A stretch of DNA of 64,000 bases from Macrostomum lignano (Eukaryota), in contig NIVC01000684.1 in assembly GCA_002269645.1 (NCBI GenBank), forward strand, positions 62,001-126,000. The letters are read 5' to 3'. A program made the translations under genes and the position numbers. Below, in pieces: positions 2,007-41,949 of the stretch. The notes beneath the pieces were generated by a model. That model searched no databases and was not told where the DNA came from. It saw nothing but the letters and a program-made list of their open reading frames with translations. Position 1 is the first letter of the stretch; the number at the start of each line of letters is the position of its first letter.

Positions 2007-2523
2007 GCTACACGCCGGCTCTACCCTAGCTATAAAATTGTTGCCATCATTAGCTGGGGCAATTGAGGGTGTGTATGGTGACACAGCCTTCAGATGCAGC
2101 TAAGCTATCGGTTGTACATCTGCCTAATGAATGCAGATGTAATCAATTAATATTATTAATATTATCAGAGCTAGCAATAGCAGGGGCTTGCTCATTGCTC
2201 CAATGAAAGTGAATACAAATTTAGAGACAAAGAGAGAACTGTGAAACTATTAAAGCAGCTCAAAGGATAAGGGTCACACAAACTGCAGTACTTTTGTGCT
2301 TCAATTTTTATATGGCTAAAAGGCTTAAATATTCTAGCTTAGGTCTCTGTTTTGGGTAATAGTTTCAGCTTTTAGTAGCAACCTAGGTTCTAGATCTAGA
2401 ATTTTTGCCAACATTTGTGTGCATTTGCCAATTAGGAAAGGTATAATAAGTTATTATTTTAACGAATAATGTATGTACAATACTTTGCAGTTTCGATTAC
2501 TCGCCAGAATATCAGTTGCCAGC

Positions 2524-4364
2524 ATGACAACAGCCTCCTCTTCCACTGGCCAAGAAGTTGGCACCAGCTGGACAAAGTCAGTCTCTGGCAAGGGCGAATA
2601 TGTCCGCAAAGCGTCCCAATTTCGCAGCTGGATTTCCAGCGATAAATCCTCCGAATTTGCGGCTGAATCCGGTCGCTACCATCTGTACGTGTGCTACGCC
2701 TGTCCTTGGGCACATCGGACCCTGATAGTTCGCGAGCTCAAAGGCCTAACAGATGCCATCACTGTCAACGTAGTTGATTGGTATTTGAAGCCTGGAGGTT
2801 GGCGGTTCAGTCCGGATAAGCCCGAGTGCACAGCCGATGATGTTAATGGGTTTAACACTCTTCGCGAGGTGTACACCTCAGTTGATCCAGATTACTCCGC
2901 CAATATCACTGTACCTGTGCTGTACGATAAGAAAAAGCGAACCATAGTTAGCAATGAATCTGCTGAGATTATTATTATGCTAAACTCGGCATTCAATGGC
3001 GTGTGCGGCCGGGCCGACTTGGATCTCTATCCCGAAGAGTTGCGCGCTGAAATTGATTCGGTGAACGAATTTGTCTACAATAATGTTAATAATGGATTGT
3101 ACAGAGCCGGCTTTGCTACCGCTCAGGTGCGATGTTTTTCTGTCTTAGAATTCTTGTCAGTCTAGTCTTTGTAGTTTCAAGTTTATTTACCAGAGAATTT
3201 GATGAAAAGTAACTAAAATGTATGTCATTACTGTTAGATAGAGAAAGTCAGGCTTGTAGTGGTAGAAGTGTATAATTGTGGTAGTTAGGACACCACGTTT
3301 ACATCCCTCATCAAGACATTAGTTAGAGTTAGAGGCAGGGTCTGTCTGTGTGCACCCTGGCGCACTTTAAGCGACATTGTCACACAACCGGCGAGAGGCA
3401 TTAGTGCCCATTCCGCCGACTCCCTTGAGCAGACACAAACAACCACAGGCACACACTCACACAGGAGTGCACAGCGGCCCCAACTTTATTTATCGCTAGG
3501 CATGTACACTTCACTGCGCCTTTAGGGGTTGTCCCTCAAAGCTGTTAATTGCACGAGCAGAGCCAAGCCGATTCCAATTTATCCCCAAATCAATGTGACT
3601 ACACTTGGAATCGAGCCTGGGCCGCTGGCTACAGAGCTACAGTTCCCTTGAGTCCCCTCCCATCAAGACATTTTTAGAAGTTTTTCCCATCATGTTTACA
3701 TAAGGTGCCAGTAGCTAAAAGTCTTAAATACAAAAATTAAGCAGATCGCCGTGGCATTTGAAGACCAGAAATTGAGTTACATTATTCCATTTTCAAGTTT
3801 ATTTTCGACGATCTTGTGAAATTCTAAAGTTTTAAGAAAGTCTATCTAAAGTTCCAGCCTATCAAACGCCTCCATAGGAGGTACAGAAGTACACAAGATA
3901 ATATTTTAGATAATCATAGGCTAGCCTAGCTTTTTAATAATGTGCAAAAAAACTACTTGTGAGTCTCTTTTGCACTGCAGGAGCCATATGATGAAGCGGT
4001 TACAAAGCTATTTAACGCTCTGGACGATCTAGAAAATCGCCTATCAACCAGACGCTACTTGGTTGGCTCGCCAAAATCTCGTTTAACACTAGCCGATGTA
4101 CGCTTATTCACCACTCTAATCCGATTCGATTGGGTCTATCATCAGCACTTCAAGTGCAATCTGCGACAGCTGGTCGACTATCCGAATCTATGGAAATTCA
4201 CTCGCGATATCTACCAACTGCCGGGCGTGTCTGGCACAGTTAATAAAGAGCACATTCGCAAGCACTATATGATGAGTCATGCTCAGATTAATCCGCACGG
4301 AATTGTGCCAATTGGGCCTCAGTTTGATTTGGATAAGCCGCACGATCGAGAGAAGCTGTCTTGA
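2524..4364 (+). CDS. Glutathionyl-hydroquinone reductase (Xi-class/ECM4-YqjG-like GST); join(2524..3126,3981..4364), 328 aa; may start further upstream (genomic ATG at 2473 or SL AUG at acceptor 2490)
   Basis: Motifs GEYVRKASQFR, GRYHLYV.YACPWAHRTLI (catalytic CPWA), TVPVLYD, VSNESAEII, NNGLYRAGFA, TLADVRLFTTLIRFD.VY..HFKCN, INPHGIVPIGP. Phase-0 GT-AG intron 3127-3980 joins FATAQ to EPYDEAV. Confidence 0.93.
3330..3655 (-). mobile_element. tRNA-type SINE-like dispersed repeat, in the GHR intron
   Basis: Minus strand has a B-box-like GGCTCGATTCC followed by a body shared with copies at about 7330-7600, 30040-30190, 31850-31985, 35170-35450 and 41950-42130. Confidence 0.65.
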
Positions 4365-5229
4365 ATGTTTTTAACTGTTGTTTCGATCTGTGTACTTTTG
4401 TAAGCGTTTGTACATTTTATAAGCCTAATTTGGATATGAGCTTATGATAATATAGAAAGGAGAAAGTTAACAACAGTGCTACTTGCCCCTGAACTTTGAG
4501 ACTATTGGTGAATTGCAATGTGAGAGCTACTATGTAATGAGGGGTCAGCTTCTCCTAGTTCATTTTCCATTAAAAAATCTTGGTCACTGGCAGTACTTGT
4601 GATTTTCAAACGATCGAACTATTATTTTTACCATAGACTATGGTACATCCATTTTTACTTGTGCATTGAACTCATTATAGCACATAAATAGCACATCAGT
4701 TTCTTACTCAGCAAAACAGAAGTGTTTTTTAAATTGGGGTAGTGGCACTGTAAATGTGCTTTCCAGTAGTTTCTATCGACAGTTTTTTTTCTTTTTTTTC
4801 AATACATTACTTTCCATGACTTAGTAGTAGAATGTGACAATTTTTCATATTTACAAATTCAACTGTTTAGTAGAACATTTTTTATCCACATTATCCAAAT
4901 GAACACACTAGTAGAAAAATCTCACGGCTCTCACGGCAAGTTTTATTGGCGTGTTTCTTCTTTACCGGTACAGCTGAAACTTTTTATTGCAACAATACAT
5001 TTATTTATTCTTATAGTAGCAATGCTGGCATTGGATTAGTAAAAGCCCAATCAACCTTTACTGTTTGACATTATTTTCCAACAATAAAGAAGCAAATAAA
5101 ATTTATTCCATTTCTTGTTTTTCAATAATTGACTTTTGACCTTTAGTTAAATTTATGATTCACTTTGCGGCTCCATTTGTTTTTGAAGAATTATCTTCAA
5201 CTGATTAATTATGTATTACGGAGCTTTTA

Positions 5230-5693
5230 GAAGGACTAGAAGGGTGGCATCTCTACCAGAAGGACAAGAAGGGAGGCATCTCTACCAGAAGGACAAGAAG
5301 GGAGGCATCTCTACCAGAAGGACAAGAAGGGTGGCATCTCTACCAGAAGGACTAGAAGGGTGGGGTCTCTACCAGAAGGACCAGAAGGGTTGGATCTCTA
5401 CCAGAAGGACAAGAAGGGTGGCATCTCTACCAAAAGGACAAGAAGGGAGGCATCTCTACCAGAAGGACTAGAAGGGTGGGGTCTCTACCAGAAGGACTAG
5501 AAGGGTGGGATCTCTACCAGAAGGACTAGAAGGGTGGCATCTCTACCAGAAGGACTAGAAGGGTGGCATCTCTACCAGAAGGACTAGAAGGGGCATCTCT
5601 ACCAGAAGGACTAGAAGGGTGGCATCTCTACCAGAAGGACTAAAAGGGTGGCATCTCTACCAGAAGGACTACAAGGGTTGGATCTCTACCAGA
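5230..5693. repeat. 29-bp minisatellite (GAAGGACTAGAAGGGTGGCATCTCTACCA)n, about 16 copies
   Basis: Direct inspection of tandem units; explains the artefactual ORF 5211..5471. Confidence 0.95.
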
Positions 5694-5790
5694 ACAGTCA
5701 GTCTTTTAAAACTTCAATTCAGAGAGACGTTCAATTGCCATTTTATGAATATAAAATTGCTAAATAATTGACACTTGTAAGTAAATAATC

Positions 5791-8637
5791 ATGAGAGCTA
5801 TGCTCAATAAATACCGGTGTGTGCCCCGTGGCCTGCTCACCCAATATTGTCGCATTTTGAGCACAGGAATTCAACCAAATGGCCAGATTGAGCTTCGTAC
5901 CGGACTGTTTGGCCGGTTAAACATTGCGTCTTCGAATCGCCCTGTAGAAATTGCTTCATTGGATCCCAATATGCATCATGATATTGACCGAGTGCTGGTG
6001 TCTCGAGCTGACAGTGATGAGGAAGCTAAAATTAAGGCTAATGGTGGAGAGTCTGTCGGTGCTGCATTTGCGGTTGCTAAGCAGACTGGAGAGCGCGAAT
6101 GGTTGATTGAGTCAGTTTCGGCTACTGATTGTGTGACTAATCATGAACAGAAGTCGATGAATTTAGCACCTCTGCGTGCAATGGTAAGATTTCACGGTTG
6201 CTGATCTTCCTTCTAGATCCTCGGTTGATTAACTGTAGAAATGCCATGCCATTTTTTCGACAACTTTCCATACCTTTCCATACGTACACCCGTAACTTTT
6301 CAATTGAGCCGCGGCTGTCTTTTTTTAAAATTTCGCACATTTTTTCATGCATCGTATTGCAAGCTAATTATTTTAGCTGATAGCATGTTAAAAATAATGG
6401 AGCGACTGAAGGAGAATGACTTATAGAAGCGCTATAAGTGCGCTAAATTTCGCGTCAGAATGGTTTTTATAACAATTCAAAGAATAATCGACTTTGACTA
6501 TGGTTACTGCATAGAACCTAAATTAATCAATATGATAAAAAAAACATTGCTAAATAATCAAGATTAGAACGATAAAAATGCGGACAATAATTTTTTCGAA
6601 GTTTTTATCAAGGTGTCTATAGCTACCTAGTGCCGTCCGCTGAAGTTCCAAAAGCTTTAGGAGGTTCAGGGCAGTAGCCAACCGTAATCTGAGATGATGC
6701 AGATACCTGGGTACGTATGGACGTACTGAACGCTTTGCAAGATCGCAATAAAATATTGAAAGCCTCAGTATTTTTCTGACTAAATCGTTGCATATCTTGA
6801 TGATCTGTAGGTGTGGCGACAATTGATTCTTGTTTGAAAATGTGTGCAACAAACTTTTTAACGCCGTGTTCTTGAATTTCGCGTGTCTGATTTGCTCTGT
6901 TTTGGTAGTGCTGTTATTAAATAGCCTCCCATATCCCATTTGCTTACAAGCCTGACTTCTAGACTTTAGATTTCTTATTGCGTTTTCGATGTTTGTTTAC
7001 TACGAGTATCCATATCCACACCCAGATCCCGATTCCAATGGACCTCGGCGTCACAGCTGGTTGCGTTGGCTGCTCAATTTCTGTAATTGAAAATCGTAAA
7101 ATCGACTTAGTCGCCAAGTCGTCTTCATTAACTATTGAGTTTAGCTTAAACCGAGTCAAAAGTGAAGAAGTCAACGTGTCAGCTGATGAAGGTTCAACTC
7201 TTCTCAAGTTTAATAAAACTGTGCTACATACTTTAAATGCAAGAGCTCGGGATAGTCTCTCTTTACAAAGTGCTGCTATGTACCAGGTAATTATATTAGC
7301 TTTCATTTGAATATTTAGTAAATCCACCTATAACGGTGCGCATCACCCAGAGGTGCAACATCTCTGTAACAACCAGCGCTGTTAGAACTCACTCTGTCCA
7401 TTTCGCTGACTCCTGAGTACATGCAAGCGTGCAGGCAGGACTGTACGCAGGCACGGCACTCGTACACACGCTCATACAGGGTGCACAAGCGGCCCCGACT
7501 TTCTAAATGTACACTCTAGCTGCAGGTGCCTCTCAGGGCTGGCCCTCATAATTGTGAATCGGACGACCACACACTGGTCGATATTCGTGCACACAAGCCC
7601 TGAATGAATCAAGGACAACTCCAGTAGAAGGACGGGAAATTACGTTTCTTAGAAAAAGTTAAGGAGCCTTTTTTGCGGAAAAATAGCTAGACTACGGAGA
7701 TTGGAACTTTCCAGGTTTTTCATACTAAAATTTTTATTGCTTTTGATAGGAGGCAGACCCAATGTTCATCTTTTGATATGTTTTGCCTTTCTTATAGCTC
7801 TATTGATATTCATAAATCTGAACGAAAAATTTAAAAGCTTTATGAATATTAATAGAGCTATAAGAAAGGCACAACATATCAAAAGATGAACATTGGGTCT
7901 GCCTCCTATCGAAAGCAATAACAATTTTAAAATGAAAGCGTAGTGTATTTTTTCGGCGAAAACCAGCCTACCGGTATTATTCAAAACCTTCAATTTTCAA
8001 GCACTTAAAGTAACGCAATGTTTATATTTATCCACAGGGCTCAGAACTGAATTTAGAGTGCAACAACGGCCTCGTTGCTATGCAAGCCAACGCACTTTAC
8101 TGTCGCAACTGCAACCTACAAGGCGGTCAAGTCAGTGTTCGCTGCGGCAGTGCACACGGCAATTTCCGGGTCAGTTCAGACGGTGCAGAGGCCAGCAGTT
8201 TAGACGTTGACAGTTTAGAAGGCAGCCTGGAAGCTAGACTGCTCTACGGAGATGTCCGACTGCACCTGACCCGGCCTAATCAGATTGAGCTCGATATTGG
8301 CGAAGGTTGCATCGATTTGAGTCTACAACCGCCAAATATTGAGGATAGTAGTAAGAATGTTAATACAAACCATCGGCACAGTCTGTTATTGGATGTCACT
8401 GCTCCGGAAATAGACTTGGAAGGCAGCGAGTTGGCTCACCTGAGCGATAGCCGATTTCCATTGGGTCCGCATGCTGTTAGACTTGTTGTTGAATTGCCCT
8501 GTTTAGCACCGCTGAATAGCAGTGGCGGAGATGCTGGCAGTTCGACTTGCAGTGTGAAACTGCGGTCAGGTCGAGTGAAAATTAGTCAGCATGCAGCCAG
8601 CGGTCTGTTTGCCTGGCTGAGTTCCGGTACGGTTTAG
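5791..8637 (+). CDS. FAM185A: FAM185A-like (DUF4097/adhesin-like beta-helix) protein; join(5791..6183,7026..7286,8038..8637), 417 aa
   Basis: Three exons joined by phase-0 GT-AG introns. Segments SLDPNMHHDIDRVLVS, YQGSELNLECNNG...ANALYC and GSAHGNFRVSSD...DVDSLEGSLEA align by eye with FAM185A (LDPLTYPDGDRVLV; LQGSSVTVSTEDG..AKYLY; GSVHGNITL..ITVDSSSGCLKA). The Arg-rich N-terminus resembles a mitochondrial presequence. Confidence 0.8.
7330..7600 (-). mobile_element. Diverged copy of the SINE-like family, in FAM185A intron 2
   Basis: Shares the core GGTGCACAAGCGGCCCCGACTTT...ATGTACACT with the 3330-3655 copy. Confidence 0.5.
7624..8005. mobile_element. Palindromic MITE (GTAG(AA)GGACG-ended family), in FAM185A intron 2
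   Basis: Long inverted repeat (about 7700-7810 vs 7838-7990, e.g. GATAGGAGGCAGACCCAATGTTCATCTTTTGATATG and its reverse complement); related copies at 12540-12884 and 26735-27341. Confidence 0.75.
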
Positions 8638-9099
8638 TAAACCGATCGGCTTTAGTACCTGTAACGTGCAGCTCAGATAAAATGATTTGATTAGTGTTGA
8701 TTGATCTTAGTAAAACCTGTTGTTTTATGACATTGCCTATTACGGCAAGCGTTTTCGATTATAATTTGACCCTTAGAGCCTCGTTCATACCGTCATGAGC
8801 AAAGTGACGTTTAACGACCAACATATGCACTATAATTGTTTCTATTGTTAAATGTCTTATAAGTGACTTAAGTTATAATATATTTTACATAATGAATTTT
8901 TTTGTTCAATGAAATAGAACAGCTTTGTAACACAGCTTTGTAAATATTTGTTAATCGTTTCGAGCTTCTTATTTCGATTTAAAATTGATAAAAATTGATG
9001 CATCAGTAACTAGATAGAGAAAACGTTTCTTTTTGTGTATAGGATAACGGCACCGCCTTGCTAGACCGACCAATTTATGGTTTTTGTTTTTTAGAGAAA

Positions 9100-11008
9100 A
9101 GTGACAGGAGAGAAGGGAGAGGGGAGGAGGGAAAGAGAGAATGGAGAGAAGGGAGAGAGAACGGAGAGAAGGGAGAGAGAACGGAGAGAAAGTAGAGGAG
9201 AGGACGGAGAGATGGGAGAGGGAAGGAGGGAGAGGAGAGAACGGAGAGATGGGAGAGGGAAGGAGGGAGAGAAGAGAACGGAGAGAAGGGAGAGGGGAGG
9301 AGGGAAAGAGAGAATGGAGAGAAGGGAGAGAGAACGGAGAGAAGGGAGAGAGAACGGAGAGAAAGTAGAGGAGAGGACGGAGAGATGGGAGAGGGAAGGA
9401 GGGAGAGGAGAGAACGGAGAGAAGGGAGAGGGAAGGAGGGAGAGAAGAGAACGGAGAGAAGGGAGAGGAGAGAACGGAGAGATGAGAGGGGGAAAGAGGG
9501 AGAGGAGAGGAGAGGACGGCGAGATGGGAGAGGGAAGCAGGGAGAGAGAGAACGGAGAGAAGGGAGAGGAGAGGACGGAGAGATGGTAGAGGGAAGGAGG
9601 GAGAGGAGAGAACGGAGAGATGGGAGTGGGAAGGAGGGAGAGGAGAGAACGGAGAGATGGGAGAGAGAACGGAGAGAAGGGAGAGGAGAGGACGGAGAGA
9701 TGGGAGAGAGAACGGAGAGAAGGGAGAGGAGAGGACGGAGAGATGGGAGAGGGAAGGAGGGAGAGGAGAGGAGAGAAGGGAGAGGAGAGGATGGAGAGAT
9801 GGGAAAGGGAAGGAGGGAGAGGAGAGAAGGGAGGGGAGAGGGAAGGAGGGAGAGAGAGAACGGAGAGGAGAGAACGGAGAGATGGGAGAGGGAAAGAGGG
9901 AGAGGAGAGGACGGAGAGAAGGGAGAGAGAACGGAAAGAAGGGAGAGGAGAGAACGGAGAGATGGGAGAGGGAAAGAAGGGAGAGGAGAGGACGGAGAGA
10001 TGGGAGAGGGAAAGAAGGGAGAGGAGAGAACGGAGAGAAGGGAGAGAGAACGGAAAGATGGGAGAGGAGAGAACGGAGAGATGGGAGAGGGAAAGAAGGG
10101 AGAGGAGAGGACGGAGAGATGGGAGAGGGAAAGAAGGGAGAGGAGAGGACGGAGAGATGGGAGAGGGAAAGAGGGAGAGGAGAGGACGGAGAGATGGGAG
10201 AGGGAAAGAAGGGAGAGGAGAGGACGGAGAGATGGGAGAGGGAAAGAGGGAGAGGAGAGGACGGAGAGATGGGAGAGGGAAAGAAGGGAGAGGAGAGGAC
10301 GGAGAGATGGGAGAGGGAAAGAGGGAGAGGAGAGGACGGAGAGATGGGAGAGGGAAAGAAGGGAGAGGAGAGGACGGAGAGATGGGAGAGGGAAAGAGGG
10401 AGAGGAGAGGACGGAGATAAGGGAGAGAGAACGGAAAGAAGGGAGAGGAGAGGACGGAGAGATGGGAGAGGGAAAGAAGGGAGAGGAGAGAACGGAGAGA
10501 AGAGAGAGAGAACGGAAAGAAGGGAGAGGAGAGAACGGAGAGATGGGAGAGGGAAAGAAGGGAGAGGAGAGGACGGAGAGATGGGAGAGGGAAAGAAGGG
10601 AGAGGAGAGAACGGAGAGAAGGGAGAGAGAACGGAAAGAAGGGAGAGGAGAGAACGGAGAGATGGGAGAGGGAAAGAAGGGAGAGGAGAGGACGGAGAGA
10701 TGGGAGAGGGAAAGAAGGGAGAGGAGAGGACGGAGAGATGGGAGAGGGAAAGAGGGAGAGGAGAGGACGGAGAGATGGGAGAGGGAAAGAAGGGAGAGGA
10801 GAGGACGGAGAGATGGGAGAGGGAAAGAGGGAGAGGAGAGGACGGAGAGATGGGAGAGGGAAAGAAGGGAGAGGAGAGGACGGAGAGATGGGAGAGGGAA
10901 AGAGGGAGAGGAGAGGACGGAGAGATGGGAGAGGGAAAGAAGGGACTCCAGGGAGAGGAGAGGACGGAGAGATGGGAGAGGGAAAGAGGGAGAGGAGAGG
11001 ACGGAGAT
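9100..11008. repeat. 1.9-kb polypurine/polypyrimidine complex minisatellite (GGAGAGGAGAGGACGGAGAGATGGGAGAGGGAAAGAAG-type units)
   Basis: The plus strand is almost only G and A. All ORFs between 9091 and 11032 are low-complexity artefacts. Confidence 0.95.
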
Positions 11009-11058
11009 AAGCCCATAATACTTAATTCGTAATTCTCTATTTGATTGTTTTTTACCAG

Positions 11059-11463
11059 AGAGAGAGAAGAGTTTTTATTCAACAAAAAATCTTGCTGGCA
11101 GCCCCAGCGAAAAAGCTCGTACAATACATCGTGGTCCGACGCGACCTGCAGGAGACTCTGGGCTGGCCATCGGGCGCCGTGATGGCCCAAGCGTGCCACG
11201 CTGCAACCGCTGCAATTCACCTGTTCTATTCGAATCCAGACACAGAGGCCTACCTGGCCGATCTAGATCGAATGCATAAAGTAGTGCTCGATGCTAGCAG
11301 CGAAGCTGAATTGACTAGCCTGTCGCAGACTCTGACTGCTAACGGTGTTGAGCACAAATTGTGGATTGAGCAGCCAGAGAATTACCCCACCGCTTTGGCT
11401 GTACGACCGTACAATAAAACTGATGTGCAGGCTTTGTTTAAACAGTTTAAAATGCTTAAGTAG
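11059..11463 (+). CDS. PTRHD1: Putative peptidyl-tRNA hydrolase PTRHD1 (Pth2 family); no in-frame ATG before the conserved domain, start probably supplied by splicing at acceptor 11058
   Basis: LVQYIVVRRDL..WPSGAVMAQACHAATAA..YLADLDRMHKVVL..HKLWIEQPENYPTALAVRPY..LFKQFKMLK matches human PTRHD1 along its length. A T-rich acceptor (ttgttttttaccag) ends at 11058 in phase 0. Confidence 0.88.
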   Translation, partial: RERRVFIQQKILLAAPAKKLVQYIVVRRDLQETLGWPSGAVMAQACHAATAAIHLFYSNPDTEAYLADLDRMHKVVLDASSEAELTSLSQTLTANGVEHKLWIEQPENYPTALAVRPYNKTDVQALFKQFKMLK

Positions 11464-12884: not shown

Positions 12885-13409
12885 TTAAGCAGTTCTTGTA
12901 CGTACTCACCATGCTGAGCAATTGGTCTAATACAAAAATAAAGATGCTATCGTTTATTCCGTTTTGCAGTTTTGTAAACCTGACTAGCAACATTCGAAAT
13001 AAAATTTATTTGTTTATTTCACAAATTATTTCACAAAGTCCTTAGTTACGAGTGGGTCCGAGAGAGAAGTTACTGGCGCAATCAAAGGGTGTGATGACTT
13101 TTCAATTTTGCTGAGTACTCGTATGTGACATGTAAAAATATGTGACATATACACATGTTTCTACATGCATAGGTTAGTCGGAACATTAAATTCGGCAGTC
13201 TCTGATCTTGTGCTTGTGCGAGCTACTGTTTATGAGTAGATCACTGATTGTTTCTTAGTCTATGGAAAAGAGCTGCAGTCCGCCCCTGTAGAAGAAATCT
13301 ACTTATTAAGCACTATTCGCACAAGTCTGACTTGGCTAAGCTTCTAACCTCAGCGACTGCTGGGGGTTCTTTAGCATTTGCATGACTTAAAGAAAGCAAA
13401 TGGTTCATC

Positions 13410-16400
13410 ATGGAAGCGATGACAGATCTGATCAAAGCGGACCACGATTCTAAAGAGGAGACGAAGCGGAACATTCTGCTAGAAACTTTCGACAGCATTC
13501 GAGATGACTTACGCCGCGGCACTCACTTATTTGCTATCAAAGTTAGAGTCGTTAGCGGCAGACAGATCCAAGGCAGCAACATATCGCCCAAGGTTTGCAT
13601 CCTGTTCAAAAAGCAGAAGCGATGGACACAGCGTGATACCAACTCTACTAACGAGCCGTTCTGGGGCGAAAACTTCTATTTCAACTGCGTGACCGATGTC
13701 GAAGACTTGCTCCGTGAAAATGTCACCTTTCGCGTTGTTAACAGTAGAGTACTTCGTCGCAATCTGGTGATTGGTGAGTTCCAGCTCAGCTTGGTCCTGG
13801 TTGCGGGGGAGAAAAGTCGCTCGATGTTCAATCGCTGGCTCGCTTTAGTAGACCAGAATGACCCCAGCTCAGTTTGCAAAGGGTTTCTCAAGATTTGCGT
13901 GGCTCTAATCTTTCCTAACGAACAAGAAGTTCATTGGCCTGACCCTTTGGCCTTTGATTCTGTCAAAGAGGACACGGAAGTCTCGGTACTTACATGTTCT
14001 GGACATCAATTTCTCAAAATGACATTCATAATGGCCGTCTACCTTATGCAAGACATTCCTAGGTACGATTTCAAAGGTCGAAAAGTCACCGATGTAGCAA
14101 TCGCCCTATCATTTGCTGGCAATACAGTGACATCAGAGCCACTTTCTCTACCGGATGAGATTGTGTCCGAGCCATACCAGATTAAAAAAGAGCTCAGACT
14201 GACGATATCCTGGCCATCAATGTGCGATAAAATTATCCTGACTCTTCTGTCTGTCAGTGGGAAGGAGTACTGTCCATTGTGTAGTCACACCTTTTTTGTT
14301 CGCGACATTGCTGTGGAGAGCTACAGCTCCTTAAAGCATAATGTGCGCCCCGGAATGCCACAGGTGGAGAATGAGCTCCATTTAGAGACCAACAAGAATC
14401 CAAAAGGCACAAAAAATGCCCGCAAGCCTGTTTTCGTTCAGAAGAGGAAAGACAAAAAAGAGGGCTTTATGCCAATGATTGGACCTTGCTTTGTTAACAT
14501 GTACGGTGCTCCGCTAGACCTAATGGAGGACAAAGTTGAGCCCGGCTACATTGAGAGTCTCAACTCCGGTGTTATTGAAGGATGTGCCTATCGAGGTCGA
14601 ATGTTCGTGCGACTGCAAAGCGAATTCTGCGACTCAACCAACGAGGCTACAGATGTGAAAGATCTCTACATTGGAACCAAAGAACAAAGAGATTTGTTAT
14701 CATTTGCAAAGTCCAACACATTCCTTCTGTTCGGAATGATCAGCTCTGTCCCAATGATTAGCGATGCTAAAAGTGCAATGCAGTTCGAGGTTTCCATCGG
14801 GCACAACGGTCTCAACAGCTTGAGCCCGGTGACGCACGCGCATCCATTTCCGTCCACTTCATTTTGCGCAAATCCCAAAGAGATTTTAAAGACGCAGCGC
14901 ATTCTCAGCGGGCATTCGTACTCAACGCTTAGCTTAGACAACGGCAAGCCGGCCTTCCTCGTTGAGAGTACCTGGGAGGACATCCGCTATCGTATACACT
15001 TTTACAACTTCATTCTCTTTCTTGAGAATAAGTGGGAGAAGAAGAAAAACCCCATTTTGATGAGCTACAAGCTCGGTCTTTGCAGGAGGCGCACTCTTAA
15101 TTCCATTCGACACATTTGCCATGAGATGATTCAGCACGTCGATTCAGCGCATATCCCTACCAATTCATCGAATGAAGCTGGTTTGAACGACATGGACCGG
15201 AGTTGGCGAGGCATTCGTGAACAACAGATCAATAACATTAAAAAGAAGCTGAGTGCTTTGCACAATTGCGCATTGTCTTACTCGACAAGTAGTCTCAGTG
15301 AAATAGCCAAAGTTGCGCGAATCTTGTGCGAGAGACTGCCGGATGTTTCTTTACTGCTGGACAATATTAAAAAGGAACCACAGCTCAGCATTCCAGACGT
15401 TTTCATTTACCTGCTGGTAAATAATGAGCGTAGGGCGTACGCCCGTCTGCCAGTATCCAGCATCTACTACTGCCAGGCCGACGCTGTGCAAAGCAATCCA
15501 GTCGACTCGATGAATAATTCGAACGTTGACTATACATATTATCGTGGCTCTGCTGCGAATCGAATGATGACCGTATTCCTCAAGATGATACCCGGCCTGC
15601 GAGGCTTCAACGAGGACGAGTACTGGCCTCTTCCGGGCATGATACGAATGAAGCTACTGTTTGGCCTGGCCTCTACCATGCGCAATGGTGTTTTGCCACC
15701 AGTCGACTATTATGGAGTAATCTACGAGTACACAAAATTGAGTGGCTTTATGGATTCTCTATGCTCCGGCTCTCAGAAGAACGATTCAATAACCTTCAAA
15801 ACAGATTCGTCGGGTATCAATATTGTCGAATCGTCGTGCAGCCTTTTAAAGTCTAAGCCCACTCAGGACCGAGACAGTAGCAAGACAAGCTGGCGATGGA
15901 AAGGTAACTGGACAACATGGCTTGACACATCCGTAGTAGTAAGCTCAACCGCCGAGACTGCTTTCGATTTCGTCTATATGGTTCACATGCGAGATAAAGC
16001 GAAAGAAATGAAGGACAGCTTGCCAGAGTGGAAGTTCATTGGCTACTTTACAGAGGAAATGGATCGCATTGTCGCGGCTGGCAATCAGTTGGACAAAAAC
16101 TTCGCTATGGACACGAAAAAGTGGACTGTGATTCTAGAGAAGAATCCTATAACTGGTCAAGAACTAGGCTGGATAGAAGTGCATGGCTCCGAAGAATATT
16201 GCAAAGATATTCACTTCTGCGAGAAAGACATCAGCACGACTGTCCGGCTTGACAGCAATTTTGCTAGGAAGTTGCTCCAGAGAAAGCGTCGACGCAATGA
16301 CATTGTCTTCACCGAGTCTATCACCCTGACCTACAGTAAGCTGCGCAACGGTAATTGGAGTGTGTCACGAGTCTGCCGATTCGACGGTTGGAAGAACATA

Positions 16401-19400
16401 ATGGACTTGGACAAGGAGGCTATTCGATGCTGGAACCATATGCAGAACTTGGCGCCAATGTCGTTAGACTTGCCTGTGCACTTAGCAACGGACGATTTGC
16501 GAACTACTGGTGGTGACAGCGAGTACATACAGGACTCTCATAGTTTGAAGACGTTCACCTGGATTGACGACTGGCAACAGCTGATGTTGCCACGGATCAA
16601 AGACGATCGATTCGTAGACATCGTTTTTGAAAGGCGGAAGATTCTTTGCGATATTATCAACAAAGAAGTCGACTCTTTGAACGGCAATAATGAAGAATTT
16701 CAGCGCTGGTCGGAATTCAGCAGCTCCGTAACTGACGGGATATTTCATCTCAACCAACAGAAAGGCGATCGGGTCAAGCGGATTCGTAAGCGCCGTCTGA
16801 TTGAACCAACTGAAGTGAGCCTGAGCTTGCAGTCCACTAAGCGGGACAGCGTTGTCAAGCTGGCTCCTTATCCATCGTTTACTGTGCAGCGCCGAGTTGG
16901 CAAGAAGTCGCGCCTTTGCTGCCTGTTTGACAGTATCGAGCATATTCCAACGCCTATAACAGTGACGGCTGTTGTGAACACCCAATACATTAGCCGATGG
17001 GAGATGCGCTGCTACTTTCACGAAGCCAGGGATCTTGCTATTGCCGAGGACAAAAACCAGCTGTACCTGTACGCTATTCTGAGCATTTCTGGCTCAAGCG
17101 CCGCTACATCAATAATAAAAAATGATTTCCACACGCAGCTGTGGCGTTGGAATGAAACAATCATTTTTCGCAATCTGGTGTTTCACGAACACGAGGACCA
17201 GGTGTTCGCTTCCCCGCCAATGATGGTCATTGAATTCTTTCGCAAGTTGCCAATACACAACGATATGTTTCTCGGCAGGTGCATCATTGACTCCGACAAC
17301 TTTGTTGTGCAGTTGGAGAACGAGAGGCACACAGAGGACCAGCTTCCTGTGCTGCAGTGGTACAAGGTTCACCTGAGAGGAATTGAAGATGCTGGCTGCG
17401 TTCTAGCAGGATTTCACTTTCGCTGCCTCAACACTCTGAGACCTTCCAACAAAATATTCGAGAACTCGATCCTCACACCACCGGAGAAAAACATGGAAGA
17501 ATTATTTAAACAGGACAGAGTGGTCCTGGATAACCGCAAACGATTTGAGATCCCAGCTGAGATCTTGCCTGTTCTTGTGCCTCATGTGCTGAAGATAACA
17601 TCGTGGGGCTTAAGAGAGCTTCGCAAGTACATGCTTTCCCGAGTAAGCAATCCTACAATCGAATTTCGTGTTGGGCACAATGTTCTTCAAACAGAAACTC
17701 TAAAATACGATAAGAGTCCAACCTTTGTGAATAGGTCTCATTCTATGCTAATCTACCTGCCTCTAGAAGTTTCCTATCTGCCTGAGCTCTTCATGGTGGT
17801 TAGAGATTCTCGCGCTTTTGGTCGCGCTCCGCTCATCGGCATGACGCGCATTCCGCTTCACAAGTGTCGGTTTAAAGACTCTGCTCAATTAGATGAGCTT
17901 GAACCGGACGAGATTAACTTTTTCATCGACACCATGTGCGGTAACATCCGGTCAACTTCGAATACTGAAAGCACCTACGACTCCCTGCGCATGCCGATTA
18001 AAGTGGACTTTTCGCGCGAGTTCTTCTTTCTATTTGAGCCACCATCGCAGCTGGCTTTTCGGCGTAACTTCCGGACCGACGAATACGATCCAGTACTTAA
18101 AAAGTATGAGGAGAAGCCAACAATTTTTCGTCAGCTAAAAGGTGCTCTATTCAACTTGTTTCTATCCAGTGGTGATCAAAAAGTCATCGAAGACTCCCAG
18201 TCCGCTAACATTGACTATAAGATGGTTATAGGCGACGAGACCTTGTCCAAGACGAAGCCGGATTGGTGGTGCAAATACTATCTATCCAAGACAAATAGCC
18301 TGGCGAAGGCGATCAACTATCTAGAAGGTGACAAACTTGAGTTCTACTATACAAAACTGGAAAACGCTGTTGTTGAAATCGGAGAAACAAGCAGCTACTT
18401 TTATAATCAAAATAGGTACATGAAAGTTTGCCAAATGCTTACCAGCGAACTAACGGCCGAACCGCTAAACGAAGAGAATTGTTTCCTTAGTAGGGAAAAT
18501 CGGGAAGAGAGCCGAAGTCGATTATATCAAGTTCAGTACAACGGATTTGAGGACGTTTTTGAGTCGATAAATCTAATGCGCTGCAACCAGATGACATCCG
18601 ATGAGGAAAATCGAGTTTGCGGTATTTTCCTAGGGAAAGTCCGCCTCTACTACCTGGGCGCCCTAGTTGATCCTTATCAAGTAGAAGAAGCAATGGAGCA
18701 GCTGTACCGAACGAAGACGCAACAAAACGTGCTACCGTATACTCAACTACACGGCACAGTGCCGAAAGAAGCTAATCGACAGGACTGCCTTGTTCGTGTC
18801 TACGTTGTTCGAGCTCTGGAACTTCAAGCTGGCAACATGTCTAGTCTGCCAAATTCGTACATTGAAGTGTTCATGGCGGACAACAAGAAGGAGACGCAAC
18901 TTAGCAGCAGCAAGGCAAATTCTATTGAGATGGACAGCAACCCGGTGTACGGCCGCATGTTCGAACTTTACTGCATCGTGCCGTTTCAAACTCGGCTTCG
19001 AGTTCGGATAATGGACAAGTCTACGTTTTTATTCGACGAAGAGATTGGTTCTACAACCATCGACTTGGAGAAGCGCATGACAACCATCTACCGGAGCACT
19101 TGCGGTCTGCCGCAGTGCTATCGCCAGGCCGGTGTCAACGCGTGGCGCGACATGGACAAGCCCAGCGAGATTCTTAGTCAAGTTTGTCGCCGATTTCGTC
19201 TAGAGGAGCCTCATTTTTATACGGAGAACGATATAGACGAGGGTTCTGACAATGGCCAAGTAATGGACGAAACAAAGCTACTGCACCGATACCTCGTATT
19301 TCCACCAGGGTGTCCCAAAGAGCCTTACAAGAATCGAGGTAGATATAGTCGGTATAGTCAACTCTTGGATGACATTGACGGAATGACGGCAAATGTGCTA

Positions 19401-20867
19401 CCCATGCCAACTGGCGATTCATCAGATGGGGACGTTCCTCCAAATATGCCGCAACCACAAGATCTAGTAGCTAGCTCCGCTTTCAATGAAGTACTTAATC
19501 GACGAAAGGGCAACAACAATGATAATGCCGTTGTTGAAGACAGCTCTATAGGTAACGAAAACAATTTTGAGCAAGCTCCTCTTCTTGAAAGAATCAAAGA
19601 GCGGGTTGAGCATGAGAGGAATTCAATGCCGAAACCTGCTCCAAGTACATTTAGACTGGAGGACTTTGACACAATCAATGAGATCCGTGGAATTCATCTG
19701 GGTCCAAGCGACCTGGAGCCGGAGATTTGTCGCGAACGCCTCGCGCTTAACATTCTACGTCGGTTGCCATTAGTAAGAGAGCACGTGGAAACCCGTCCTC
19801 TATACAGTCCTCTGCAGCCTGATATTGAGCAAGGTCGTCTAGAGATGTGGGTCGACATCTTCAGCCTAAGCGGTTTGAAGAACGACGAAGAATTATCCGC
19901 TACAGACCAAGACAACAAGCAGCTAAAAGCGGAGGAGATGATTTCAAAGTTGCGAGAACTTCTACCCCCGCCTGTTGACATTTCACCCAGAGATCCGCAG
20001 CCGTACGAATTGCGCGTAGTTGTCTGGAGTGTACACGACGTTATCAGCGAGACTGACTACGGCGCTGCATGCACAGGTGATTTGTACGTTCGTGCTTGGA
20101 TGGAGGGCCTCGGCGATACACAAGAAACTGACGTGCACTACAACTCTCTGGATGGCGAGGGCGAGTTCAATTGGCGCTTCGTGTTCCAGCTGGACTATCT
20201 TCCGCACGAGCGAACCATCTGCGGCAAGCAGAAGGTCAGCTTGTTCAATAGAATCCTCACCAAGATACCGCCGATGCTGCACCTGCAACTGTGGGACAAT
20301 CGCCGATTCCGATTCGATGATTTCATTGGCAGCGTTGAGGTGGACTTGTCTAAGCTGGCCGCGCCAACCCGCACGAAGGACAGTTGCTTCATGCGCCAAC
20401 GCTGGGGCATGGACATCGGCATGATGGACCAACCGATGCCGGCTATTAACAAAACAGACGACACTGTCAACCTGTTCGAGGTGCAACGCGTCTACGGCTA
20501 CTGGCCATTGTGCACGTCAAAGTCTCACGAGCTTAGCGACAACAAATCCGGCGCGTGGATGGTTGGCAAGCTGCTGATGGAGCTGGAGATGCTATCTAAG
20601 GAGGAGGCCACGCTCAAGCCAGCAGGTCTGGGACGCGGCGAGCCTAATCAGAACCCTCATCTGCCCGATCCCAAGCGGCTGTCCATCGGCAACAGTTTTC
20701 TAGCCACTTCGCTGGCCGCATTTCGCAAGATATTCTGGCCGAACTACAAATGGTACTGCATTGGCGGTGTGCTAATGATAATATTCGTGGCCCTGCTCGT
20801 TGTCGTCATTGTTACTACGCCAATAACTACTTTGACTGGCAGTGATGCTGCCAAACCAATCGGTTGA
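13410..20867 (+). CDS. Ferlin family multi-C2 tail-anchored protein, single 7.46-kb ORF, 2485 aa; begins at C2B (no C2A), with degenerate DysF-like region
   Basis: C2B (KVRVVSGRQIQG..STNEPFWGENFYF..FNRWLALVD..KGFLKICVAL); EGFMPMIGPCFVNMYG; FerB EPQLSIPDVFIYLLVNNERRAYARLP; Trp-rich and Arg-cluster DysF-like segments; C2E LVRVYVVRA; C2F YELRVVVW..DLYVRAWM..QETDVHYNSLDGEGEFNWRFVF; GRGEPN; C-terminal transmembrane helix WYCIGGVLMIIFVALLVVVIV. In-frame TGA at 13383 closes the frame upstream. Confidence 0.95.
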   Translation: MEAMTDLIKADHDSKEETKRNILLETFDSIRDDLRRGTHLFAIKVRVVSGRQIQGSNISPKVCILFKKQKRWTQRDTNSTNEPFWGENFYFNCVTDVEDLLRENVTFRVVNSRVLRRNLVIGEFQLSLVLVAGEKSRSMFNRWLALVDQNDPSSVCKGFLKICVALIFPNEQEVHWPDPLAFDSVKEDTEVSVLTCSGHQFLKMTFIMAVYLMQDIPRYDFKGRKVTDVAIALSFAGNTVTSEPLSLPDEIVSEPYQIKKELRLTISWPSMCDKIILTLLSVSGKEYCPLCSHTFFVRDIAVESYSSLKHNVRPGMPQVENELHLETNKNPKGTKNARKPVFVQKRKDKKEGFMPMIGPCFVNMYGAPLDLMEDKVEPGYIESLNSGVIEGCAYRGRMFVRLQSEFCDSTNEATDVKDLYIGTKEQRDLLSFAKSNTFLLFGMISSVPMISDAKSAMQFEVSIGHNGLNSLSPVTHAHPFPSTSFCANPKEILKTQRILSGHSYSTLSLDNGKPAFLVESTWEDIRYRIHFYNFILFLENKWEKKKNPILMSYKLGLCRRRTLNSIRHICHEMIQHVDSAHIPTNSSNEAGLNDMDRSWRGIREQQINNIKKKLSALHNCALSYSTSSLSEIAKVARILCERLPDVSLLLDNIKKEPQLSIPDVFIYLLVNNERRAYARLPVSSIYYCQADAVQSNPVDSMNNSNVDYTYYRGSAANRMMTVFLKMIPGLRGFNEDEYWPLPGMIRMKLLFGLASTMRNGVLPPVDYYGVIYEYTKLSGFMDSLCSGSQKNDSITFKTDSSGINIVESSCSLLKSKPTQDRDSSKTSWRWKGNWTTWLDTSVVVSSTAETAFDFVYMVHMRDKAKEMKDSLPEWKFIGYFTEEMDRIVAAGNQLDKNFAMDTKKWTVILEKNPITGQELGWIEVHGSEEYCKDIHFCEKDISTTVRLDSNFARKLLQRKRRRNDIVFTESITLTYSKLRNGNWSVSRVCRFDGWKNIMDLDKEAIRCWNHMQNLAPMSLDLPVHLATDDLRTTGGDSEYIQDSHSLKTFTWIDDWQQLMLPRIKDDRFVDIVFERRKILCDIINKEVDSLNGNNEEFQRWSEFSSSVTDGIFHLNQQKGDRVKRIRKRRLIEPTEVSLSLQSTKRDSVVKLAPYPSFTVQRRVGKKSRLCCLFDSIEHIPTPITVTAVVNTQYISRWEMRCYFHEARDLAIAEDKNQLYLYAILSISGSSAATSIIKNDFHTQLWRWNETIIFRNLVFHEHEDQVFASPPMMVIEFFRKLPIHNDMFLGRCIIDSDNFVVQLENERHTEDQLPVLQWYKVHLRGIEDAGCVLAGFHFRCLNTLRPSNKIFENSILTPPEKNMEELFKQDRVVLDNRKRFEIPAEILPVLVPHVLKITSWGLRELRKYMLSRVSNPTIEFRVGHNVLQTETLKYDKSPTFVNRSHSMLIYLPLEVSYLPELFMVVRDSRAFGRAPLIGMTRIPLHKCRFKDSAQLDELEPDEINFFIDTMCGNIRSTSNTESTYDSLRMPIKVDFSREFFFLFEPPSQLAFRRNFRTDEYDPVLKKYEEKPTIFRQLKGALFNLFLSSGDQKVIEDSQSANIDYKMVIGDETLSKTKPDWWCKYYLSKTNSLAKAINYLEGDKLEFYYTKLENAVVEIGETSSYFYNQNRYMKVCQMLTSELTAEPLNEENCFLSRENREESRSRLYQVQYNGFEDVFESINLMRCNQMTSDEENRVCGIFLGKVRLYYLGALVDPYQVEEAMEQLYRTKTQQNVLPYTQLHGTVPKEANRQDCLVRVYVVRALELQAGNMSSLPNSYIEVFMADNKKETQLSSSKANSIEMDSNPVYGRMFELYCIVPFQTRLRVRIMDKSTFLFDEEIGSTTIDLEKRMTTIYRSTCGLPQCYRQAGVNAWRDMDKPSEILSQVCRRFRLEEPHFYTENDIDEGSDNGQVMDETKLLHRYLVFPPGCPKEPYKNRGRYSRYSQLLDDIDGMTANVLPMPTGDSSDGDVPPNMPQPQDLVASSAFNEVLNRRKGNNNDNAVVEDSSIGNENNFEQAPLLERIKERVEHERNSMPKPAPSTFRLEDFDTINEIRGIHLGPSDLEPEICRERLALNILRRLPLVREHVETRPLYSPLQPDIEQGRLEMWVDIFSLSGLKNDEELSATDQDNKQLKAEEMISKLRELLPPPVDISPRDPQPYELRVVVWSVHDVISETDYGAACTGDLYVRAWMEGLGDTQETDVHYNSLDGEGEFNWRFVFQLDYLPHERTICGKQKVSLFNRILTKIPPMLHLQLWDNRRFRFDDFIGSVEVDLSKLAAPTRTKDSCFMRQRWGMDIGMMDQPMPAINKTDDTVNLFEVQRVYGYWPLCTSKSHELSDNKSGAWMVGKLLMELEMLSKEEATLKPAGLGRGEPNQNPHLPDPKRLSIGNSFLATSLAAFRKIFWPNYKWYCIGGVLMIIFVALLVVVIVTTPITTLTGSDAAKPIG

Positions 20868-41716: not shown

Positions 41717-41949
41717 TGAAAATAATTTTGAAGCTAGTTTCAACCTACAGTGAGCTACGACTTTTCGAGAGACATAAATATTTTTGGCGTCTATTCGAAA
41801 TTTCCATATTTATGCAGGGAAATTTTATCGCTGAAGGAATTCTATATCGATAAATAGTCAGGGCCGACAGAAGCCTCACGACTTTGCGCTTGGCTAAGCT
41901 GGGGGGGGGGGGTCGGAATCCTCATTAAACAGATCGCTCGGCTGTGACC

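What the first reader, a model, noticed from the sequence alone, without database searches (positions are those of the whole stretch)
11041..11463. PTRHD1 has no genomic start codon: initiator Met probably donated by the spliced leader
Seen: the conserved domain starts at LVQYIVV (about 11116), yet the first in-frame ATG lies inside the domain (VMAQACH). The frame is closed by a stop before 11041. A strong T-rich acceptor ends at 11058 exactly in phase 0, and no convincing ATG-bearing exon with a good donor is visible upstream across the purine tract. Known: the flatworm SL ends in a conserved AUG that can act as the initiator. Inference: the mRNA is SL-AUG + RERRVFIQQKILLAAPAKKLVQY..., giving 135 aa, close to the human protein length. 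The gene would then depend absolutely on trans-splicing to be translated.
Basis: partly seen in the sequence, partly recalled or inferred. Interest (0 to 1): 0.7.

Follow-up and report, generated by a model that had tools for sequence, protein, structure and literature searches.

The report
Flatworm gene borrows its start codon
This flatworm (Macrostomum lignano) PTRHD1 gene very probably has no start codon of its own and gets its first AUG from the spliced leader, a known flatworm trick, but at a different splice site from the one first proposed, and that site is blurred by what look like polishing errors in the reference genome.

Summary
The window is Macrostomum lignano Mlig_3_7, contig NIVC01000684.1. 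The PTH2/PTRHD1 frame 11041-11463 has no in-frame ATG before 11182, which lies inside the domain. It is closed upstream by TAA 11023-11025.

The sister (homeologous) copy shows ATG where the window has CTG (11095-11097). That looks like a lost genomic start, but the ATG is probably not genomic. The homeolog's bases just 5' of GCAGCC (TGCATG) equal the spliced-leader (SL) 3' end. The window's TTGCTG is one base from the published trans-splice acceptor motif YTNCAG. The GenBank 5'-partial CDS starts exactly at 11098.

Two neighbouring genes show clean CAG/ATG swaps between the copies at YTNCAG sites just upstream of their coding starts. The assembly was polished with Pilon using RNA-seq reads. 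STAR end-to-end mapping is documented for the transcriptome step, and it would stamp SL bases onto the genome at trans-splice junctions.

Best reading (about 0.75): trans-splicing at 11097|11098 joins the SL AUG to GCA GCC, giving MAAPAKKLVQY..., 122 aa. The acceptor at 11058 and the 135-aa N-terminus are probably wrong. The mechanism is already known. No reads could be inspected.

The parts
11098..11463 (+). PTRHD1 (PTH2-domain) coding exon: 121 codons (AAPAKKLVQYIVV...KMLK) plus TAG. It is intronless. The GenBank model of this copy is a 5'-partial CDS starting exactly at 11098.
   Evidence: Pfam PF01981, E = 8e-25. Best hits are PTRHD1 orthologs at 55-66% identity. P0121 is 121 aa at L002 10001-10366, which equals window 11098-11463.
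11092..11097 (+). Inferred spliced-leader trans-splice acceptor. The assembly reads TTGCTG. The inferred true sequence is TTGCAG, a perfect match to the published M. lignano trans-splice acceptor motif [T/C]TNCAG. The junction is 11097|11098.
   Evidence: Motif from PMC8629364. The homeolog reads TGCATG at the same place, which is the SL 3' end. Analogous CAG/ATG swaps occur at two neighbouring genes.
11096..11096 (+). Suspect base T, the middle of the codon CTG at 11095-11097. It equals the SL base at position -2 and destroys the AG of the acceptor. It is probably a Pilon/RNA-seq polishing scar of a genomic A.
   Evidence: Pilon polishing used RNA-seq. STAR was run with --alignEndsType EndToEnd in the transcriptome-assembly step. 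Both copies carry T at -2.
11059..11094 (+). It is probably outron and is removed by trans-splicing.
   Evidence: There are 9 differences in 87 nt (11011-11097) between homeologs, against 5 in about 560 nt downstream. No ortholog has a matching extension. All three frames are free of stops in this stretch (read directly from the sequence), so its openness carries no information.
11041..11058 (+). It is a real sequence feature, in phase 0 and conserved in the homeolog. No evidence shows it is the junction used.
   Evidence: The annotated transcript starts 39 nt downstream.
11182..11184 (+). First genomic in-frame ATG. It lies inside the PTH2 domain. Starting here would remove the invariant R, D, L, W and G of the first strand region.
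   Evidence: columns 27, 29, 30, 36 and 39 are invariant or nearly so in 117-119 homologs.
9107..11007 (+). GA-rich minisatellite (38-nt unit, about 50 copies) between the upstream 417-aa gene (stop at 8637) and PTRHD1. It is part of the presumed outron or intercistronic region and is only about 0.2 kb long in the homeolog.
2485..2490 (+). Intact acceptor TTGCAG|TTTCGA at the 5' end of the neighbouring GST-like gene, whose models are 5'-partial in both copies. The homeolog reads TTGATG at the same place (SL bases at -3 and -2). This is a supporting example of the same signature.
5742..5747 (+). TTTATG in the window where the homeolog has the acceptor TTTCAG|AATATAAA, 43 nt upstream of the 417-aa gene's ATG (5791). 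Here the window copy carries the SL-like bases. This is the third example of the signature.

Best explanation
The window carries one of two assembled homeologous copies of the Macrostomum lignano PTRHD1 gene, an intronless 121-codon exon.

Proposed mechanism:
- The pre-mRNA is SL trans-spliced at an acceptor of the usual M. lignano type. The genome is inferred to read ...AAAAAATCTTGCAG|GCAGCC..., with the junction at 11097|11098.
- The 35-nt spliced leader ends in ...UUGCAUG. Its terminal AUG is therefore joined directly and in frame to GCA GCC CCA.
- That AUG sits in a good initiation context (G at -3, G at +4).
- It is the only AUG that can start a complete protein: MAAPAKKLVQYIVV..., 122 aa.
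- The gene therefore has no genomic start codon and depends on trans-splicing for translation.

Why the assembly looks different:
- The reference does not show the AG. It shows CTG here and ATG in the sister copy.
- Mlig_3_7 was polished with Pilon using RNA-seq reads. The same paper ran STAR end to end for transcriptome assembly.
- Reads that begin with the last few SL bases are then forced onto the outron bases just 5' of the junction, and they overwrite those bases.
- The effect is strongest at position -2 and fades with distance.

Status of each step:
- Shown: the lack of an ATG, the SL-identical bases in the sister copy, the near-consensus acceptor, the annotated start at 11098, the same CAG/ATG signature at two neighbouring genes, and the polishing procedure.
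- Inferred: trans-splicing at this site, the true base at 11096, use of end-to-end mapping in the polishing step, and translation from the SL AUG.
For: 1. No in-frame ATG lies before the domain. The frame is closed at 11023-11025.

2. The SL is CGGTCTCTTACTGCGAAGACTCAATTTATTGCATG and the trans-splice acceptor motif is [T/C]TNCAG. The window has TTGCTG|GCAGCC, one base from TTGCAG.

3. Homeolog L001 (NIVC01000544.1) has ACTGCATG|GCAGCC.
- Its positions -1 to -6 equal the SL 3' end.
- The copies differ at four sites within the eight bases 5' of the junction (-8, -5, -4, -3; window 11090, 11093, 11094, 11095). At all four the homeolog base is the SL base.
- Both copies have the SL base T at -2.
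- Position -7, further out, is not converted.

4. The GenBank 5'-partial CDS of this copy starts exactly at 11098. The annotation pipeline trimmed the SL from transcripts and reads, cut genes at trans-splice sites and called ORFs with TransDecoder.

5. The same signature appears at two neighbouring genes.
- GST-like gene: window TTGCAG|TTTCGA against homeolog TTGATG|TTTCGA. Both models are 5'-partial and start 3-6 nt after the junction.
- 417-aa gene: homeolog TTTCAG|AATATAAA against window TTTATG|, 43 nt 5' of the ATG.
- Of 95 YTNCAG sites in 19.7 kb of aligned homeologs, these are the only clean CAG-to-ATG swaps. Both are on the gene strand, just 5' of a CDS start.
- My rough estimate of the chance expectation for such events is about 0.02.

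6. Pilon polishing used RNA-seq mapped by STAR. STAR was run with --alignEndsType EndToEnd for transcriptome assembly.

7. M+AAPAKKLVQY gives 8 residues before the conserved VQY motif. Orthologs have mostly 3-16, and several start MAAP or MAAS. The flatworm orthologs retrieved are 117-122 aa.

8. Context fits an operon-type, trans-spliced gene.
- The neighbouring genes lie on the same strand.
- The distance to the upstream gene after subtracting the repeat is about 560 nt, and 762 nt in the homeolog.
- Both are under the 1-kb operon criterion of PMC8629364.

9. The SL AUG as initiator Met is established in flatworms (Cheng et al. 2006, cited). The SL's final ATG is flagged as a start codon in Macrostomum.
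Against: - No SL-containing read, cDNA or raw DNA read could be inspected.
- The assembly as deposited has no AG at 11096-11097 in either copy, so the acceptor is inferred.
- The polypyrimidine tract just 5' of 11097 is weak: TTTTTATTC, then an A-rich run.
- A stronger T-tract plus AG sits 39 nt upstream at 11058 and should compete.
- The homeolog's own GenBank model starts 23 nt downstream of the junction rather than at it.
- The GST-like models start 3-6 nt after their junction. Annotated 5' ends are therefore not exact markers.
- EndToEnd mapping is documented for the transcriptome step, not explicitly for the polishing step.
- Long SL fragments are not enriched in the window, so the scars, if real, are only 1-5 nt long.
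Confidence: 0.75

Rival explanations
1. Copy-specific loss of a genuine genomic start codon. Under this reading the ancestral gene has a normal ATG, really present in the homeolog as ACTGCATGGCA. This copy has mutated it to CTG. The copy would be a decaying or poorly translated duplicate in a neopolyploid genome, and the sister copy would supply the function.
For: - The homeolog assembly reads ATG GCA GCC..., giving MAAPAKKLVQY.
- M. lignano carries two to three subgenomes, with heavy duplication in the assembly.
- The region 5' of 11098 diverges at about 10%, so hits on the ATG are not surprising if constraint is relaxed.
Against: - It does not explain why the homeolog's bases at -4, -5 and -8 also equal the SL.
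- It does not explain why the window version is one base from a consensus acceptor.
- It does not explain why the annotated CDS starts at 11098.
- It does not explain why two neighbouring genes show CAG/ATG swaps at YTNCAG sites. One of these lies in a 5' leader, where an ATG has no coding role.
- The CDS shows no decay: 3 differences in 363 nt. The one amino-acid change (D/G) falls in a variable E/G/Q column.
Confidence: 0.1
2. Trans-splicing occurs at the T-rich acceptor ending at 11058. The SL AUG is joined to AGA GAG..., giving M-RERRVFIQQKILLAAPAKK-LVQY... (135 aa).
For: - AG 11058 is the first AG after the best pyrimidine tract, and it is in phase 0.
- The tract and the AG are conserved in the homeolog.
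- No stop lies between 11059 and the domain.
Against: - Neither annotated model reaches 11059. They start at 11098 and at the equivalent of 11121.
- The 36-nt stretch evolves like non-coding DNA: 4 of its 12 codons are changed, none synonymously, and no frame has stops, so openness carries no information (sequence).
- The resulting 21 residues before VQY are longer than in almost all orthologs.
- It does not explain the SL-like bases at 11098.
- TACCAG fits the motif YTNCAG less well than TTGCAG does.
Confidence: 0.06
3. Non-AUG initiation at CUG 11095-11097 (or UUG 11092-11094) on a transcript that is not trans-spliced at 11098. This would give the same MAAPAKK... protein at low efficiency.
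For: - CUG is the most efficient near-cognate start codon (general knowledge).
- G is present at +4.
Against: - U at -3 is a poor context.
- It requires the assembly base to be real.
- It explains none of the SL-like signatures.
Confidence: 0.03

Closest known systems
Flatworm mRNAs that use the spliced leader's 3'-terminal AUG as initiator methionine (Schistosoma mansoni; Cheng, Cohen, Ndegwa and Davis, J Biol Chem 2006)
   Same: - The SL ends in AUG.
- The recipient exon starts in frame at the first codon after Met.
- No genomic initiator exists, so translation depends on trans-splicing.
- The Macrostomum SL's final ATG is already noted as a start codon in the M. cliftonense/M. hystrix genome paper.
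   Different: - The species is a free-living macrostomorph.
- The gene (PTRHD1) is a new example. In the papers I could search, no list or frequency of SL-AUG-dependent genes is given for M. lignano.
- The case here is inferred from genomic and annotation evidence, not from cDNA or translation assays.
PTRHD1 / PTH2-type peptidyl-tRNA hydrolase family (Pfam PF01981; human PTRHD1, trematode 'peptidyl-tRNA hydrolase II')
   Same: - A full-length PTH2 domain.
- 55-66% identity to animal PTRHD1.
- The invariant family residues I checked in the alignment are retained.
- With the SL Met, both length and N-terminus (MAAP...) are typical.
   Different: - The gene models retrieved for other flatworms start with Met: MGTLVQY, MSSLVQY, MAIVQY. 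I did not check whether those Mets are encoded in the genome.
- Here the Met is not genomic.
- The gene is intronless.
Reference-assembly errors introduced by short-read polishing (Pilon) with RNA-seq reads
   Same: Base changes toward the read sequence appear where many reads end with non-templated bases. The changes are restricted to a few nucleotides.
   Different: Here the foreign bases are the 3' end of the spliced leader, so the scars mark trans-splice junctions. They can create false ATGs or destroy AG acceptors. I found no description of this for Mlig_3_7 in the papers searched.

Membership tests
PTRHD1 / PTH2 peptidyl-tRNA hydrolase (PF01981) | Significant full-length match to the PTH2 domain profile | tested here: met
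   E = 8.1e-25, 87.7 bits (cut-off 23), profile positions 2-115 of 115.
PTRHD1 / PTH2 peptidyl-tRNA hydrolase (PF01981) | Closest relatives are PTRHD1 orthologs, and the family-invariant residues are retained | tested here: met
   Top hits are named PTRHD1, with E down to 6e-45. The invariant or near-invariant columns I checked are conserved (R27, D29, W36, G39, Q44, H47, A51, Y65, L92, W102, E104, Q105, P106).
PTRHD1 / PTH2 peptidyl-tRNA hydrolase (PF01981) | Peptidyl-tRNA hydrolase activity | not testable with these tools
   Needs a biochemical assay.
SL-AUG-initiated flatworm mRNAs (Cheng et al. 2006 type) | The organism's spliced leader ends in AUG | tested here: met
   The M. lignano SL is ...TTTATTGCATG (PMC8629364). 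The final ATG is noted as a start codon.
SL-AUG-initiated flatworm mRNAs (Cheng et al. 2006 type) | The mRNA is SL trans-spliced at a defined acceptor | tested here: inconclusive
   Evidence is indirect only: SL-identical bases 5' of 11098 in the homeolog, a near-consensus acceptor, the annotated start at 11098, and the same signature at two neighbours. No SL-bearing read could be retrieved.
SL-AUG-initiated flatworm mRNAs (Cheng et al. 2006 type) | The SL AUG is in frame with the conserved ORF, with no intervening stop | tested here: met
   The junction 11097|11098 puts AUG directly before GCA GCC CCA... It would also hold for 11058|11059.
SL-AUG-initiated flatworm mRNAs (Cheng et al. 2006 type) | No genomic in-frame AUG is able to start a complete protein in the mature mRNA | tested here: met
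   The first in-frame ATG is 11182, inside the domain. The homeolog's ATG is probably SL-derived.
SL-AUG-initiated flatworm mRNAs (Cheng et al. 2006 type) | Translation actually starts at the SL AUG | not testable with these tools
   Needs N-terminal proteomics, ribosome profiling or a reporter assay.

The most novel reading that the evidence does not exclude
The SL-identical bases (ATG, GCATG) just 5' of trans-splice junctions are real genomic sequence rather than polishing scars. Pieces of the spliced leader, including its AUG, would then have been copied back into the genome at acceptor sites, for example by cDNA-mediated gene conversion. This would hard-wire an SL-derived start codon into one homeolog of PTRHD1 and of the GST-like gene, and free those copies from dependence on trans-splicing.
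Probability: 0.04. Interest if true: 0.8.

Novelty: new member of a known kind. Interest (0 to 1): 0.4.

Why it matters
Biology. It adds a conserved housekeeping-type gene to the class of flatworm genes that cannot be translated without trans-splicing. PTRHD1 is a putative peptidyl-tRNA hydrolase. The neighbouring GST-like gene probably belongs to the same class, since its SL AUG would also be in frame with nothing in between. Two of four genes in one same-strand cluster hints that the class may be common in M. lignano. Such genes would be hidden in GenBank as '5'-partial' proteins.

Practical. If the scar interpretation is right, the Mlig_3_7 reference carries SL-derived base errors at some of its roughly 28,000 annotated trans-splice sites. 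These errors fake start codons or erase AG acceptors. That affects gene models, promoter and 5'-end design for transgenesis, guide design and comparisons between homeologs. The scars themselves could be used as markers of trans-splice junctions.

Tried and rejected
- Cis-spliced upstream ATG exon. Only repeat-encoded ATG-to-GT segments with poor donors (GTAGAG) exist, and they are absent from the short repeat of the homeolog. Rejected.
- Retroposed SL upstream of the gene. The SL aligned to the 39-nt leader scores no better than shuffles (about 72-75% of shuffles score at least as high) or than random genomic 39-mers. Rejected.
- Decay of this copy. There are only 3 CDS differences, and the D/G change lies in a variable column. 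There is no support and little statistical power.
- Direct transcript evidence. Exact-protein look-ups of the 93-aa and 134-aa ORFs found nothing. No near-identical transcript-derived protein is in the database. The supplements of three M. lignano papers do not mention Mlig017504 or PTRHD1, a fourth paper has no supplements held, and a full-text search found nothing.
- Third subgenome copy. The clusters of PTRHD1 and of the adjacent ferlin each have only two members, on the two contigs.
- A protein search with the last exon of the 417-aa gene returned nothing at my overly strict threshold of 1e-20. That search was wasted.
- Enrichment of SL 3' k-mers in the window. TTGCATG occurs 12 times against 13.6 expected. 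The 13-mer with up to 3 mismatches occurs 42 times against 36. There is no enrichment, so any scars are short.
- A loose scan for any SL-register difference between homeologs was no better than random pseudo-SLs, 49 against a mean of 54. Only multi-base changes at acceptor motifs are informative.
- Rfam: no match anywhere in the window.
- Cheng 2006 and Wasik 2015 could not be read. They are cited through other papers or from memory.

Full report
**Identity of the window.** The window is 100% identical over 20,366 bases to contig NIVC01000684.1 of the Macrostomum lignano assembly Mlig_3_7, GCA_002269645.1. The organism is a free-living flatworm with abundant SL trans-splicing. Its genome holds two to three diverged subgenomes.

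- The frame ending at TAG 11461-11463 translates as ...*FVILYLIVFYQRERRVFIQQKILLAAPAKKLVQYIVVRRDL...MLK*.
- The last in-frame stop is TAA 11023-11025.
- The first in-frame ATG is 11182-11184.
- Pfam PTH2 (E = 8e-25) covers residues 21-133 of the translation from 11059. The ATG therefore lies about 21 positions inside the domain, downstream of invariant family residues.
- The best database relatives are PTRHD1 proteins of animals, at 55-66% identity.
- AG 11057-11058 follows the most pyrimidine-rich stretch of the region and is in phase 0.
- A 1.9-kb GA-rich minisatellite (9107-11007) lies upstream and offers no credible ATG exon with a donor.

**First impression from the sister copy.**
- A second copy of the whole locus lies on NIVC01000544.1 (L001/L004). 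It has the same gene order: GST-like, 417-aa protein, PTRHD1, ferlin, all on one strand.
- It reads ...AAAAAAACTGCATGGCAGCC..., that is ATG GCA GCC, giving MAAPAKKLVQY. The window has ...AAAAAATCTTGCTGGCAGCC....
- Orthologs have mostly 3-16 residues before the conserved VQY motif, and several start MAAP or MAAS.
- Taken at face value this is a copy-specific start-codon loss, ATG to CTG at 11095-11097, in a redundant homeolog.

**Why I no longer think that is the best reading.** Six things point to a trans-splice junction at 11097|11098 and to the ATG being spliced-leader sequence.

1. The SL ends ...ATTGCATG, and the published acceptor motif is [T/C]TNCAG. The homeolog's six bases 5' of GCAGCC are TGCATG, identical to the SL end. 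The window's are TTGCTG, one base from TTGCAG.

2. Downstream of 11098 the copies are about 99% identical.
- Within the eight bases 5' of the junction they differ at four sites: -8, -5, -4 and -3 relative to 11098. At all four the homeolog base is the SL base.
- Both copies carry the SL base T at -2.
- The more distant -7 is not converted.

3. The GenBank model of this copy is a 5'-partial CDS that begins exactly at 11098. The annotation pipeline trimmed the SL from transcripts and reads, cut genes at trans-splice sites and called ORFs with TransDecoder.

4. The same signature occurs at two neighbouring genes.
- At the GST-like gene the window has the intact acceptor ACTTTGCAG|TTTCGA, and the homeolog has ACTTTGATG|TTTCGA. 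Both models are 5'-partial and begin 3-6 nt after that point.
- Forty-three nt upstream of the ATG of the 417-aa gene the homeolog has CATTTTCAG|AATATAAA, and the window has CATTTTATG|.
- In 19.7 kb of aligned homeologous sequence there are 95 YTNCAG sites. These two are the only clean CAG-to-ATG swaps. Both are on the gene strand, immediately 5' of a coding start.
- Seventy runs of two or more adjacent substitutions occur in the alignment. From these I estimate, roughly, about 0.02 such events by chance.
- One of the two swaps lies in a 5' leader, where an ATG has no coding role. That argues against selection for real start codons.

5. A mechanism is documented. Mlig_3_7 was polished with Pilon using RNA-seq reads mapped by STAR. 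The same paper ran STAR with --alignEndsType EndToEnd for transcriptome assembly.
- Reads that start with the last one to five SL bases are then aligned with mismatches onto the outron bases next to the junction.
- They can outvote the DNA reads, most strongly at -2 and less with distance.
- That matches the monotonic pattern seen: window PTRHD1 at -2 only; homeolog PTRHD1 at -2 to -5; GST-like homeolog and window 5745-5746 at -2 and -3.

6. The product fits. SL AUG plus GCA GCC... gives MAAPAKKLVQY..., 122 aa, in the size range of the retrieved flatworm orthologs (117-122 aa). The AUG has G at -3 and G at +4.

**Mechanism proposed.**
- PTRHD1 is transcribed with, or close behind, the upstream gene.
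- The distance to that gene after subtracting the repeat is about 560 nt, and 762 nt in the homeolog. Both are under the 1-kb operon criterion of PMC8629364.
- The outron, including the GA minisatellite and the T-rich tract at 11041-11058, is removed.
- The SL is joined at 11098, and the SL's AUG starts translation.
- The SL AUG acting as initiator Met is established for flatworms (Cheng et al. 2006, cited). The final ATG of the Macrostomum SL is explicitly called a translation start codon.
- The mechanism is therefore known, and this gene is a new example.

**What argues against, and what is not shown.**
- I could not see a single read.
- The AG at 11096-11097 is inferred, not observed.
- The pyrimidine tract just before it is modest, while a better one with an AG lies 39 nt upstream.
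- The annotated 5' ends of the other models are offset by 3-23 nt from the inferred junctions.
- End-to-end mapping is documented for the transcriptome step, not explicitly for polishing.
- Long SL fragments are not enriched in the window.

**Rivals I keep.** The figures are rough and are not meant to sum to 1.
- A true start-codon loss in this copy: 0.10.
- CUG initiation: 0.03.
- SL bases that are real genomic sequence written back by cDNA-mediated conversion: 0.04.

The principle, an initiator Met donated by the SL, is probably right. The acceptor (11058), the 13-residue extension RERRVFIQQKILL and the 135-aa length are probably wrong. The 36-nt stretch diverges at the intergenic rate: 9 differences in 87 nt for 11011-11097, against 5 in about 560 nt downstream. 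It has no counterpart in orthologs.

**Dead ends.** These are listed under 'tried and rejected': upstream ATG exon, retroposed SL, decay of the copy, transcript look-ups, paper supplements, a third copy, k-mer enrichment and Rfam.

Noticed in passing
window 2485-2497 (homeolog L004 1640-1653): The neighbouring GST-like gene (GST_N_2/GST_C, 337-338 aa) is also annotated 5'-partial in both copies. The window has the acceptor TTGCAG|TTT CGA TTA... An SL AUG joined there would be in frame (MFRLLARIS...), so this gene probably also takes its initiator from the SL. An in-frame genomic ATG lies 18 nt (six codons) upstream of the junction, in the presumed outron.
   Followed up: partly
window 5742-5791: The window reads TTTATG|AATATAAA where the homeolog has the acceptor TTTCAG|. 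An SL AUG joined here would be followed by an in-frame TGA after 7 codons, and then by the gene's own ATG at 5791. This looks like a polishing scar in the window copy itself.
   Followed up: partly
window 13378-13384: TTGCATG, the last 7 bases of the SL, lies 26 nt upstream of the ferlin ATG (13410) in both copies. It is followed by ACT TAA, which would stop an SL-AUG reading frame at once. It may be another trans-splice junction with a longer scar, or it may be chance (roughly a 3% chance of finding one this close to any of the six gene starts).
   Followed up: partly
window 3977-3978 and 13275-13276: The same two-base difference between homeologs, CTGCAG in the window against CTCTAG in the sister copy, occurs twice. 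One is inside the GST-like gene and one is 130 nt upstream of ferlin. The recurrence of an identical double change is unexplained.
   Followed up: no
window 9107-11007 versus L001 about 9665-9885: The GA-rich minisatellite (38-nt unit, about 50 copies, 1.9 kb) is roughly eight times longer here than in the homeolog. It carries many ATGs and long repeat ORFs in several frames on both strands, which are mechanical artefacts of the repeat. A strong acceptor-like TTTTTGTTTTTTAG (9080-9093) sits just before it in both copies.
   Followed up: partly
window 13410-20867 and 11098-11463: The 2485-aa ferlin gene is a single uninterrupted ORF, and PTRHD1 is also intronless. The published average for the species is about 5 introns per gene.
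   Followed up: no
L001 9975-10343: As assembled, the homeolog contains a complete 122-aa ORF with ATG. Even so, its GenBank protein (PAA81177.1) is a 113-aa partial that starts at QYIVV. Its transcript model is therefore 5'-truncated.
   Followed up: partly
window 5229-5694, 28660-28873, 37193-37738, 39341-39568, 40127-41721, 42277-42778, 44007-45501, 46417-49909, 50263-52170, 54293-55895: The window is packed with minisatellites (units of 4-180 nt, arrays up to 1.6 kb). They account for the strong local GC- and AT-skew anomalies seen in the composition profile.
   Followed up: no
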